The position numbers and the translations under genes are program-made. The notes beneath the pieces were generated by a model, which searched no databases, had not been told where the DNA came from, and saw only the letters and a list, made by a program, of their open reading frames with translations. A stretch of DNA of 63,350 nt, filler included, from Octopus bimaculoides (taxonomy: Eukaryota), in NCBI RefSeq assembly GCF_001194135.2. It is 7 parts of 7 records of this genome, joined end to end, with 100 filler letters (N's around TTAATTAATTAA, not from the genome) between each part and the next. Parts side by side here need not be neighbours in the genome. Positions count along the whole stretch, not along the records: positions 62,001 to 63,350 come from NW_026394902.1; 6 more parts are not named here. The stretch is one strand, 5' to 3'. Of the stretch, positions 62,242 through 63,254 are shown piece by piece (positions within the stretch are counted from its first letter, which is position 1; each line of letters begins with the position of its first letter).

Positions 62242-63254
62242 ATGAAAATAAAAGAAACTCAGTTCTTTAAACTGCTAGAATTCTATCAAAAATGTGATCA
62301 TTTTATCCAGTCGTGCATGACTAGTTCATCATTGAAGTCGCCAATATTTAAAACAGTTTGTTGCCAAGCACTTTATATTCTGTTCTGTATATACCTGATT
62401 ATAAACCCTATTCGTCACATTGTTACTTTAATACTATATGGGAAAATTGAAATCCATCTCATACTTATGTATGGTTTCACGGTGTATTTCAGAGGATATC
62501 TTTCTGTCTTTGCTTTGTTAAAACTCTTCAGAAAATCCCAAACTAAAAATCTGGCTGAAGCTGTCGCCGAAATTAAAATTGAAGAAGATGATGAAAAATA
62601 TTCCATCATGAATATCATGTATTCATTTAAGGCATTTTATTCAATTATTTGCTTCACGGTCCTTTCTAACATATTTGTAGATTTTAATGTACCGTATTTG
62701 AATAGCGATTTGATGAGGTTCCTAACATTTCCTCTATCAACCAATGATATATCTAAAATATCAGTTTTAGGAATACAAACTGCACTTAATTCCATTTCAC
62801 TTATANNNNNNNNNNAATATCAGTTTTAGGAATACAAACTGCACTTAATTCCATTTCACTTATACTTTTGGTAACTGATTTGCACTTATGTCTGATAATC
62901 GGATTTACACTCAGCTATGAGTTCAACAAGTTGGCAAACGAAGCTAAACGCTTTGTAACGGAGAAGCAATCCGACCATTCAAATTTCATTACGAAGCAGA
63001 AAGATATCACAGAAATATGCAGCGCTCATAATATTCTGAGTAGAACACTGAAATTTGTAAATGAATCTTTACAACTAACACCAGGATTTATTGTTGTTGC
63101 TAGCATTTTTAGCTGTTGTATTGCAACTTACGGGATTATAAATGATTTACTGACAAATAACATCTACACATACCTATATATTTTAATGTTGGCATCTGGT
63201 TGTTTCTTTTATTTAATATTATTAATTTTGTGTGGAATTTATTTAAATAAATCG
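62242..63254 (+). CDS. Gustatory receptor-like (GRL, 7tm_7 / 7TM ion channel superfamily) protein, first coding exon (TM1-TM6)
   Basis: Removing the gap and the duplicated 49 bp (62806-62864) fuses the two ORFs in frame into 318 stop-free codons with six hydrophobic segments. GR-type hallmarks: LSYEFNKL after TM4, ICSAHNILSRTLKFVNES before TM5, LILCGIYLNKS ending TM6, then a phase-0 donor TCG|GTGAGT at 63255. TM7 (TY..QF motif) is not in the window. Confidence 0.8.

What the first reader, a model, noticed from the sequence alone, without database searches (positions are those of the whole stretch)
62242..63254. Intact gustatory-receptor-like (7TM ion channel) gene in a probable cephalopod genome
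This is the best candidate for an under-described system here. The reconstructed 318-aa exon has the topology and motifs of the insect GR/OR superfamily through TM6, plus a phase-0 intron after TM6 as is typical near the C-terminus of that family. GRLs are known from some non-arthropod animals, including molluscs. Characterised cephalopod chemosensation centres instead on nAChR-derived chemotactile receptors. An intact, divergent GRL could represent a separate ligand-gated chemosensory or developmental channel family. I cannot verify whether it has already been described.
Basis: partly seen in the sequence, partly recalled or inferred. Interest (0 to 1): 0.75.

Follow-up and report, generated by a model that had tools for sequence, protein, structure and literature searches.

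The report
Octopod gustatory-receptor-like alternative first exon
The piece holds one intact, conserved 'variable' first exon (membrane helices 1-6) of an octopus relative of insect taste-receptor ion channels; in Octopus genomes such exons sit in tandem arrays and are spliced onto three shared small exons, the layout known from some insect taste-receptor genes.

Summary
The assembly gap (62806-62815) is flanked by an exact 49-nt duplicate. Collapsing it gives a 318-codon ORF (62242-63254) that ends at a phase-0 GTGAGT donor. Two orthologous sequences carry a single copy through this site.

The family assignment is supported indirectly. The exon alone has no Pfam hit, but its Octopus paralogues reach Pfam 7tm_7 (PF08395) above threshold (31.6 bits against a cutoff of 26.6). 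Those full-length proteins end in a TYILVVIQT motif in TM7, and their genes have three phase-0 3' introns. An AlphaFold model of the window exon (pLDDT 84) matches only insect Gr43a, OR and Orco structures (TM-score 0.49-0.59).

'Intact gene' is only partly right. The piece holds one exon; TM7 lies outside it. In Octopus sinensis the orthologous exon (59% aa identity) is the last of five intact tandem long first exons (plus one truncated copy) upstream of three shared short exons. This is the Gr28b/Gr39a-type alternative-first-exon layout of insects. dN/dS of 0.38-0.51 argues for function.

The source is an octopod, but not a close relative of O. sinensis (dS 0.53). It is a new member of a known kind. 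Cephalopod GRLs look undescribed in the literature I could search.

The parts
62100..62241 (+). Conserved upstream non-coding block (putative exon-specific promoter/5'UTR). It is purine-rich with no polypyrimidine/AG acceptor, and has an in-frame TGA at 62233-62235.
   Evidence: blastn of the piece against the O. sinensis E4 region starts at piece position 100. The last 141 nt are 74.8% identical to O. sinensis and the full 241 nt are 68.8% identical, against 45% for shuffles. It also aligns to L001. The 40 nt before the ATG are 32.5% pyrimidine, against 70% at a real acceptor of the shared exon.
62242..62805 (+). Variable first exon, part 1: start codon and codons 1-188. Contains the N-terminal S0-like helix, TM1 (about 62353-62433), TM2 (about 62452-62520), TM3 (about 62617-62691) and the first half of TM4.
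   Evidence: ORF and translation; helices from hydropathy and the AlphaFold model; alignment to Octopus proteins.
62757..62805 (+). Left copy of the 49-nt exact duplicate flanking the gap.
   Evidence: Longest suffix of the left side equal to the prefix of the right side is 49 nt.
62806..62815 (.). Assembly gap (10 N) inside TM4; an artefact of unmerged overlapping contig ends.
   Evidence: orthologues are single-copy through the site.
62816..62864 (+). Right copy of the 49-nt duplicate, to be collapsed onto 62757-62805.
62865..63254 (+). Variable first exon, part 2: codons 189-318. Contains the rest of TM4, the long intracellular TM4-TM5 helical extension, TM5 (about 63072-63143) and TM6 (about 63165-63242), ending ...CGIYLNKS.
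   Evidence: 16 of the 18 Octopus variable exons end in LN(K/R/T)S or INRS at the same aligned point; the v2 pair ends in LHAA.
63255..63260 (+). 5' splice donor GTGAGT, phase 0.
   Evidence: The same donor is found in L001 and in the O. sinensis orthologous exon (AAATCA|gtgagt). RefSeq isoforms splice at this position.
63255..63350 (+). First 96 nt of the intron leading to the shared 3' exons, which are not in the piece.
   Evidence: Stop codon 8 codons after the donor; 68-82% identical to the orthologous introns; no TM7-like coding in it.

Best explanation
The piece carries one functional, exon-specific-promoter-driven 'variable' first exon of an octopod gustatory-receptor-like (GRL; 7TM ion channel superfamily) locus.

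The exon encodes the N-terminal helix plus TM1-TM6. In insect OR/GR structures this is the part that forms the ligand pocket and most of the intracellular anchor.

Proposed splicing mechanism: transcription starts just upstream of one such exon. Its GTGAGT donor is spliced in phase 0 to three small shared exons further downstream (about 3.4 kb in O. sinensis). These encode the TM6-TM7 loop and TM7 with the TYxxxxxQ motif, the pore-lining helix in insect relatives. Sister variable exons have donors but no acceptors, so they are removed as intron.

The locus would thus produce a set of subunits with different sensing modules and one common pore/assembly helix. These would presumably form tetrameric ligand-gated cation channels.

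Shown here: the ORF, its conservation and constraint, the fold, family membership of the paralogues, and the array-plus-shared-exon layout in two Octopus genomes.

Inferred: that the window's species has the same layout, the promoter choice, channel function, and any chemosensory role.
For: ORF and gap resolution.

Orthologues: L001/P0001 is 70% aa identical, with 76.6% nt identity over the whole piece. O. sinensis exon L005:42321-43271 is 59.4% aa identical, against 34-43% for the other variable exons. In an NJ tree the window, L001 and Osin608_v5 form one clade.

Constraint: dN/dS is 0.38 (dS 0.47) against L001 and 0.51 (dS 0.53) against O. sinensis. There are no stops and only in-frame indels.

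Layout in O. sinensis LOC118764608: five intact exons of about 955 nt plus one truncated exon, all on one strand. Each begins with ATG and ends at gt(a/g)agt. They are followed by shared exons at 46673-46741, 47649-47738 and 49533-49586, and all three introns are phase 0. RefSeq isoforms X1, X2 and X3 use different first exons with the same C-terminus. The same layout occurs in O. sinensis LOC118764607 (8 variable exons) and O. bimaculoides LOC106880719 (5 variable exons).

Family: Pfam 7tm_7 scores 31.6 bits for P0027 (residues 41-388 to profile 33-367/370), 30.3 for P0024 and 27.4 for P0014, against a cutoff of 26.6. The TM7 motif is TYILVVIQT.

Fold: the window exon model has pLDDT 84 and pTM 0.80. 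The Foldseek top 8 hits are all Gr43a, AgamOR28, MhOR5 or Orco, with probability 1.00 and TMq 0.49-0.59. The next class of hits, ABC transporters, has TM-score about 0.2. The same pattern holds for full-length P0023.

Topology: N-in, with long intracellular loops.

Against: The window exon alone gives no Pfam hit at E<=10. Fused in silico to the Octopus shared exons it scores only 12.3 bits.

Sequence searches against solved structures find nothing. Foldseek E-values are weak (0.01-0.1).

The 3' exons of this species are not in the piece, nor in the 0.7-2 kb of intron held in L001 and L008.

The O. sinensis orthologous exon (v5) is not part of any RefSeq isoform retrieved here, so its splicing to the shared exons is inferred from position and phase only.

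No expression or functional data exist. The gap could hide a real duplication.
Confidence: 0.75

Rival explanations
1. It is the first exon of a simple, stand-alone GRL gene with its own private 3' exons. No alternative first exons would be used in this species, and the tandem exons in Octopus would really be separate genes that annotation has merged.
For: The orthologous O. sinensis exon is the one nearest the shared exons (3.4 kb upstream). With them it would form an ordinary 4-exon gene even without any alternative splicing. It is not in a listed RefSeq isoform. The window itself shows only one exon.
Against: Only one set of shared exons follows 5 intact variable exons in LOC118764608, and only one follows 8 in LOC118764607. 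Without the shared exons the upstream exons would encode TM7-less proteins, yet they are intact and conserved between Octopus species. RefSeq X1-X3 models join different first exons to the identical C-terminus. The same layout is well documented in insect GRs.
Confidence: 0.15
2. It is a dead exon or pseudogene. Either the gap hides a real tandem duplication that shifts the frame, or the exon is no longer spliced or expressed.
For: Read literally, with 10 N, the frame is broken. Pseudo-exons do occur in these arrays: L005:6109-6486 is truncated by a TA microsatellite, and two variable exons carry a stop.
Against: The exact 49-nt identity of the flanks is typical of unmerged contig ends. Collapsing them restores a frame that is collinear, with no gap at the junction, with two orthologues. 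dN/dS of 0.38-0.51 over dS of about 0.5, with no stops in three species, is not expected of a pseudogene. The ATG, the upstream stop, the donor and the upstream block are all conserved.
Confidence: 0.06
3. It is not a GR/OR-superfamily protein but an unrelated lineage-specific multi-pass membrane protein that happens to resemble the fold.
For: No direct HMM hit for the exon. Identity to insect structures is 8-14%, and Foldseek E-values are only 0.01-0.1.
Against: Paralogues at E of about 1e-64 to the window exon pass Pfam 7tm_7's curated threshold with a full-length collinear match. They also show the TM7 TYxxxxxQ motif, three phase-0 3' introns with one directly before the TM7 exon, and the insect-type alternative-first-exon layout. 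The top structural hits are exclusively GR, OR or Orco.
Confidence: 0.03

Closest known systems
Insect alternatively spliced GR loci (Drosophila Gr28b, Gr39a, Gr23a; Blattella Gr60a-m)
   Same: Tandem long first exons encode TM1-6. Each is spliced to three shared short final exons that encode the C-terminus with TM7. Intron phases are 0-0-0, and pseudo-exons are interspersed in the arrays (PMC6175461; PMC3011837; here).
   Different: The host is a mollusc (octopod), not an arthropod. Sequence identity to insect GRs is in the twilight zone (8-14% in structural alignments). The last motif residue is T rather than F (TYILVVIQT). Whether the layout is inherited or convergent is unknown. Splicing of the window's exon type has not been demonstrated.
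Animal GR-like (GRL) proteins of non-arthropods (Robertson 2015; Saina et al. 2015; Benton et al. 2020), including the molluscs Lottia, Crassostrea and Aplysia
   Same: Length of about 390 aa, 7 TM, intracellular N-terminus, long intracellular loops, the TM7 motif and conserved 3' phase-0 introns. These are the criteria quoted in PMC7746228 and PMC9998090.
   Different: An exhaustive HMMER profile search of 1.84 billion representatives returned only 19 proteins (E<=0.001). Every one that carries a source name is from Octopus. This clade is therefore too divergent to link to other molluscan GRLs by HMMER. No paper describing cephalopod GRLs was found in the held library.
Solved insect 7TM ion channels: Orco (6C70), MhOR5 (7LIC), AgamOR28 (8V3C/8V3D), DmGr43a (8JM9/8X84), BmGr9 (8VC2/8UVT)
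   Same: Best and only consistent structural matches to the predicted models, with TM-scores of 0.49-0.60. The S0 helix, six TM helices and long cytoplasmic extensions of TM4 and TM5 are all reproduced.
   Different: Only predicted structures were compared. The TM7 region of the full-length Octopus model is low-confidence (pLDDT below 50). No sequence-level match was found.
Cephalopod chemotactile receptors (CRs, nAChR-derived pentameric channels)
   Same: They are also ionotropic, and are expanded in octopus relative to squid (26 vs 6 CRs; PMC11526382).
   Different: CRs are an unrelated fold and family (Cys-loop pentamers). They are experimentally shown to be sucker chemoreceptors; nothing is known about GRL expression or ligands.
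Clustered protocadherin / UGT1A variable-first-exon loci of vertebrates
   Same: A tandem array of variable first exons, each presumably with its own promoter, is spliced to shared constant exons (established knowledge, not tested here).
   Different: These are unrelated proteins. No conserved promoter element shared by all octopus variable exons was seen; upstream conservation is between orthologous exons only.

Membership tests
GR/GRL family (Pfam 7tm_7, PF08395; 7TMIC superfamily) | Significant match to the 7tm_7 profile HMM | tested here: inconclusive
   The window exon alone has no hit at E<=10. An in-silico fusion with the O. sinensis shared exons scores 12.3 bits, E 0.1, and is collinear (37-387 to 28-367). 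Paralogues related to the window exon at E 1e-64 do pass the 26.6-bit cutoff: P0027 31.6 bits, P0024 30.3, P0014 27.4. The feature is met transitively, not directly.
GR/GRL family (Pfam 7tm_7, PF08395; 7TMIC superfamily) | Seven TM helices, protein about 350-500 aa | tested here: inconclusive
   The window exon supplies six TM helices in 318 aa. TM7 is outside the piece. Full-length Octopus isoforms are 375-390 aa with a seventh hydrophobic helix at 366-384.
GR/GRL family (Pfam 7tm_7, PF08395; 7TMIC superfamily) | Intracellular N-terminus and longer intracellular than extracellular loops | tested here: met
   Positive-inside count: the N-terminus and loops 2-3 and 4-5 hold 20 K+R in 37, 32 and 52 aa. 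Loops 1-2, 3-4 and 5-6 hold 3 K+R in 6, 23 and 7 aa. This is a prediction, not an experiment.
GR/GRL family (Pfam 7tm_7, PF08395; 7TMIC superfamily) | TM7 motif TYhhhhhQF | not testable with these tools
   The TM7 exon is not in the piece or in the orthologous contigs L001 and L008. In Octopus loci the shared last exon reads MIGSFITYILVVIQTK(P/S)L, in which T, Y and Q are conserved and F is replaced by T.
GR/GRL family (Pfam 7tm_7, PF08395; 7TMIC superfamily) | [quoted passage not shown] | tested here: met
   The window has a phase-0 GTGAGT donor after codon 318. In O. sinensis the orthologous locus has three phase-0 introns. The last lies immediately before the exon starting MIGSFITY. The family feature is as stated in PMC9998090.
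GR/GRL family (Pfam 7tm_7, PF08395; 7TMIC superfamily) | Orco/OR/GR three-dimensional fold | tested here: met
   AlphaFold model of the window exon: pLDDT 84, pTM 0.80. The Foldseek PDB top 8 are all Gr43a, AgamOR28, MhOR5 or Orco, with probability 1.00 and TMq 0.49-0.59; other folds score 0.26 or less. Predicted structure only, with weak E-values.
GR/GRL family (Pfam 7tm_7, PF08395; 7TMIC superfamily) | Forms a tetrameric ligand-gated cation channel | not testable with these tools
   Needs expression and electrophysiology or cryo-EM.
Gr28b/Gr39a-type alternatively spliced chemoreceptor locus | Tandem long first exons on one strand followed by a single set of shared short 3' exons | tested here: met
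   Met in Octopus orthologous and paralogous loci: L005 has 5 intact plus 1 pseudo exon, L007 has 8, L006 has 5, each followed by three shared exons. It is not visible in the window itself, which holds one exon only.
Gr28b/Gr39a-type alternatively spliced chemoreceptor locus | Transcripts that join different first exons to the same 3' exons | tested here: inconclusive
   RefSeq isoform models X1, X2 and X3 of LOC118764608 map to three different first exons with the identical C-terminus. I could not see the transcript evidence behind these models. The exon type found in the window (v5) is in none of them.

The most novel reading that the evidence does not exclude
Octopods may possess clustered, variable-first-exon GRL loci: at least 13 variable exons in two O. 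sinensis loci, with a probable third array. These would generate a combinatorial set of 7TM ion-channel subunits sharing one pore helix, and would act as a second, so far unstudied ionotropic chemosensory (or other sensory) system beside the nAChR-derived chemotactile receptors. In addition, the layout of long first exons plus three shared phase-0 exons, seen in both insects and a mollusc, may be ancestral to protostome GRs rather than convergent.
Probability: 0.25. Interest if true: 0.7.

Novelty: new member of a known kind. Interest (0 to 1): 0.45.

Why it matters
GR-like channels are known in some molluscs, but cephalopod chemosensation is currently explained by chemotactile receptors and GPCRs. 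I found no paper on cephalopod GRLs, and the Octopus models are labelled 'uncharacterized protein'.

This analysis shows that octopods keep a constrained, fast-evolving GRL family organised like insect Gr28b/Gr39a loci. That gives a concrete, testable candidate for an additional receptor family. Open questions are where the isoforms are expressed, whether one promoter is chosen per cell, and what gates them.

It also gives a comparative data point on whether this unusual splicing layout is ancient. For genome annotation, these exons are systematically mis-called: read-through 'proteins' on short contigs, and missing isoforms in RefSeq.

Tried and rejected
- Pfam on the exon alone: nothing.
- phmmer/hmmsearch of the exon, of family profiles A2 and A3, and of P0024 against PDB sequences: only chance hits.
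- Search for TM7 or shared exons in the last 96 nt of the piece and in the orthologous contigs L001 and L008: none.
- Look-up of isoform X2 proteins P0002 and P0003 on contigs failed because only the longest isoform is indexed. This was solved through cluster members P0026 and P0027.
- A promoter motif shared by all variable exons: not seen; only orthologous exons share upstream sequence.
- Tandem repeats and Rfam in the piece: none.
- Species identification through the SRR run numbers: the only paper hit was irrelevant.
- Ten literature searches for cephalopod GRLs, or for alternative splicing of non-arthropod GRLs, found nothing specific. Robertson 2015 is not held, so I cannot exclude that it mentions such splicing.
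- Rejected: a decapodiform (squid/cuttlefish) origin, because non-coding flanks still align to Octopus and dS is only 0.53.
- Rejected: Octopus sensu stricto, because dS is 3-7 times the O. sinensis-O. bimaculoides value of 0.07-0.18.

Full report
1. THE OBSERVATION

The piece (62001-63350) is AT-rich, at about 31% GC. It contains an ATG at 62242 preceded two codons upstream by an in-frame TGA. Read literally, the frame runs into the 10-N gap at 62806-62815 and is lost on the other side.

The 49 nt before the gap (62757-62805) are identical to the 49 nt after it (62816-62864). This is what unmerged overlapping contig ends look like. The join falls on a codon boundary, between codon 188 (ending at 62805) and codon 189 (starting at 62865).

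Two orthologous sequences run through this spot with a single copy and no indel. At this composition a 318-codon open frame has a chance probability of about 3e-11. The only reservation is that reads are needed to exclude a real duplication under the gap.

2. WHAT IT IS RELATED TO

The exon product has no Pfam hit and no sequence-level match to any solved structure.

A search of the 5.8-billion-protein collection gave four hits:
- An unnamed 334-aa call on a 2.3-kb Logan contig (P0001, 69% identity).
- 'Uncharacterized protein' isoforms of Octopus sinensis LOC118764607 and O. bimaculoides LOC106880719 (42% identity, E about 1e-64), the latter with a precomputed PF08395 tag.
- A second Logan protein.

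An exhaustive HMMER profile search of 1.84 billion cluster representatives found only 19 proteins at E<=0.001. All members that carry a name are from Octopus; the rest are from raw-run assemblies. The family is small and isolated at the sequence level.

3. SPECIES AND CONSTRAINT

The whole piece, flanks included, aligns to Logan contig L001 at 76.6%. It aligns to the O. sinensis chromosome CM016866.1 at 74% over 1.15 kb.

- Window against L001: dS 0.47, dN/dS 0.38.
- Window against O. sinensis: dS 0.53, dN/dS 0.51.
- Orthologous exons of O. sinensis and O. bimaculoides differ by dS of only 0.07-0.18.

The source is therefore an octopod outside the O. sinensis/O. bimaculoides group, and certainly not a squid or cuttlefish. 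Three species keep the frame, the ATG, the upstream stop and the donor. This argues for a functional exon under moderate purifying selection, as is typical of chemoreceptor genes.

4. GENE ARCHITECTURE (THE MAIN ADDITION)

Several Octopus isoforms have different N-terminal parts of about 320 aa but an identical C-terminus. I fetched the O. sinensis locus LOC118764608 (L005) and mapped everything onto it.

On one strand lie six exons of about 955 nt: 1457-2413, 6109-6486, 10001-10954, 16398-17354, 27576-28511 and 42321-43271. The second is truncated by a TA microsatellite. Each begins with ATG directly after a stop and ends at ...LN(K/R/T)S|gt(a/g)agt.

They are followed by one set of three small exons:
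- 46673-46741: VHSITQSIHYMQFQGVDQEVVAK
- 47649-47738: ILVFLNRLTTESHGIDVGGCFVITPSSTLT
- 49533-49586: MIGSFITYILVVIQTKPL, then the stop codon.

All three introns are phase 0. RefSeq isoforms X1, X2 and X3 use the third, fourth and fifth long exons respectively.

The window exon is most similar by far to the last long exon (59.4% against 34-43% for the others). In a neighbour-joining tree it groups with that exon and L001.

The same layout recurs in O. sinensis LOC118764607, about 370 kb away (eight long exons and three shared exons). It also recurs in O. bimaculoides LOC106880719 (five long exons and three shared exons). Of the 18 long exons extracted, 16 are intact.

The 141 nt upstream of the window's ATG are 75% identical to the O. 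sinensis orthologous exon's upstream sequence, against 45% for shuffles. They are purine-rich with no acceptor-like tract. This fits a first exon with its own promoter or 5'UTR.

5. FAMILY MEMBERSHIP

Benton et al. (PMC7746228) and Benton & Himmel (PMC9998090) give the criteria:
- length of about 350-500 aa;
- seven TM helices;
- intracellular N-terminus;
- intracellular loops longer than extracellular loops;
- the TM7 motif TYhhhhhQF;

The window exon supplies six TM helices with a clear positive-inside N-in pattern and long intracellular loops, plus the first of the phase-0 introns. The Octopus loci supply the rest: isoforms of 375-390 aa, TM7 with TYILVVIQT, and the other two phase-0 introns.

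Pfam 7tm_7 is passed above its curated cutoff by three paralogous isoforms:
- P0027, the full-length O. bimaculoides isoform X1: 31.6 bits, E 1.4e-7, one collinear stretch 41-388 to profile 33-367/370.
- P0024: 30.3 bits.
- P0014: 27.4 bits.

The window exon joined in silico to the O. sinensis shared exons scores only 12.3 bits. This isoform type is therefore more divergent, and its membership is transitive.

Structure prediction of the window exon, using a 21-sequence alignment, gave pLDDT 84 and pTM 0.80. Its eight best Foldseek matches in the PDB are all Gr43a, AgamOR28, MhOR5 or Orco, with probability 1.00 and TM-scores of 0.49-0.59. All other folds score 0.26 or less. The full-length P0023 model gives the same list, with TM-scores up to 0.60 and TM7 itself at low confidence.

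I file it as a GRL/7TMIC member with good but partly indirect support.

6. HOW IT MOST LIKELY WORKS

The following steps are inferred. One variable exon is chosen by transcription initiation just upstream of it. Its donor is joined to shared exon A. Downstream variable exons lack acceptors and are spliced out with the intron.

The products differ in TM1-6, which in solved insect ORs and GRs hold the ligand pocket. They share the TM6-TM7 loop and TM7, which lines the pore and contributes to the intracellular anchor of the tetramer. This last point comes from established structural knowledge of Orco, MhOR5 and BmGr9 and was not tested here.

Shared TM7 would let isoforms co-assemble. An internal acceptor (TTTCAG|G) in shared exon A additionally yields isoforms with or without 14 residues, VHSIT(Q/R)SIH(Y/F)MQFQ.

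Ligands, tissues and even a chemosensory role are unknown. Precedents include non-chemosensory roles, such as Gr28b in light and heat sensing (PMC6175461) and a Nematostella GRL in body patterning (PMC7746228).

7. NOVELTY AND VERDICT

GRLs in molluscs are known (Robertson 2015, cited in PMC7746228). Cephalopod chemosensation reviews mention only chemotactile receptors and GPCRs (PMC11526382; PMC11886862; PMC12635824). None of ten literature searches found cephalopod GRLs or alternative first-exon splicing of non-arthropod GRLs. The library lacks Robertson 2015 and most subscription papers.

The finding is real and correctly classified in kind. It is a single alternative first exon rather than an intact gene. 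It is a new member of a known family with a known (insect-type) gene layout in a new phylum.

Interest is moderate (0.45). It is a solid lead to an unstudied octopus receptor family, not a new kind of system.

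Noticed in passing
L007:25413-26405 vs L006:16612-17604; L007:28335-29288 vs L006:25005-25958: Two orthologous variable-exon pairs between O. sinensis and O. bimaculoides have dN above dS (dN/dS 1.31 and 1.55, with dS 0.07-0.08). Other pairs give 0.42-0.66. This may reflect positive selection on some sensing modules; the estimates are noisy.
   Followed up: partly
L005:6109-6486: A variable exon of O. sinensis LOC118764608 is cut short after about 128 codons by a TA microsatellite (translated as YIYIYIY...). 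This is a pseudo-exon inside the array, as also occurs in insect alternatively spliced GR loci.
   Followed up: partly
L005:1457-2413 and L005:42321-43271: Two intact variable exons of the O. sinensis array appear in none of the RefSeq isoforms retrieved. The first lies upstream of the annotated gene start. The second is the orthologue of the window exon. The annotation probably under-counts isoforms.
   Followed up: partly
L005:59368-59586: Another variable-type exon begins about 10 kb downstream of the last shared exon of LOC118764608, at the edge of the fetched locus. This suggests a further array that was not examined.
   Followed up: no
L006:50545-52809 (- strand) vs 56117-59271 (+ strand): O. 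bimaculoides has a second, inverted set of the three shared exons a few kb from the forward set. This is either a neighbouring array on the opposite strand or an assembly artefact. The locus contains 23,650 N.
   Followed up: no
L007:53664-54039 and 65168-65551 (- strand): Fragments of variable exons (first 127 or so codons) lie in reverse orientation inside the O. sinensis LOC118764607 array.
   Followed up: no
L005:46673-46741; L007:91120-91188: Shared exon A contains an internal TTTCAG|G acceptor 42 nt in. This explains the X1/X2 isoform pairs that differ by 14 residues, VHSIT(Q/R)SIH(Y/F)MQFQ.
   Followed up: yes
P0001, P0004-P0011, P0019-P0021 (Logan contigs L001-L004, L008): Prokaryote-style gene calls on short raw-run contigs read through the GT(A/G)AGT donor (translated as VS...). 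They therefore appear as 330-350-aa 'proteins' with spurious tails. P0019-P0021 (18-21% identity) may represent further divergent GRL exon types.
   Followed up: partly
P0016 (Octopus vulgaris CAI9727304.1): This hypothetical protein joins an unrelated N-terminal part to scrambled pieces of variable-exon sequence. It is probably a mis-built gene model over one of these arrays.
   Followed up: no
window 62100-62241: Upstream non-coding sequence is conserved between orthologous exons of three octopods, for example GACAAGTAAACTCACAGAGAAAT and AAACTGTGAAGGAGACAAAATCTGAAGAATC. It is not conserved between paralogous exons, which makes it a candidate exon-specific promoter or 5'UTR.
   Followed up: partly
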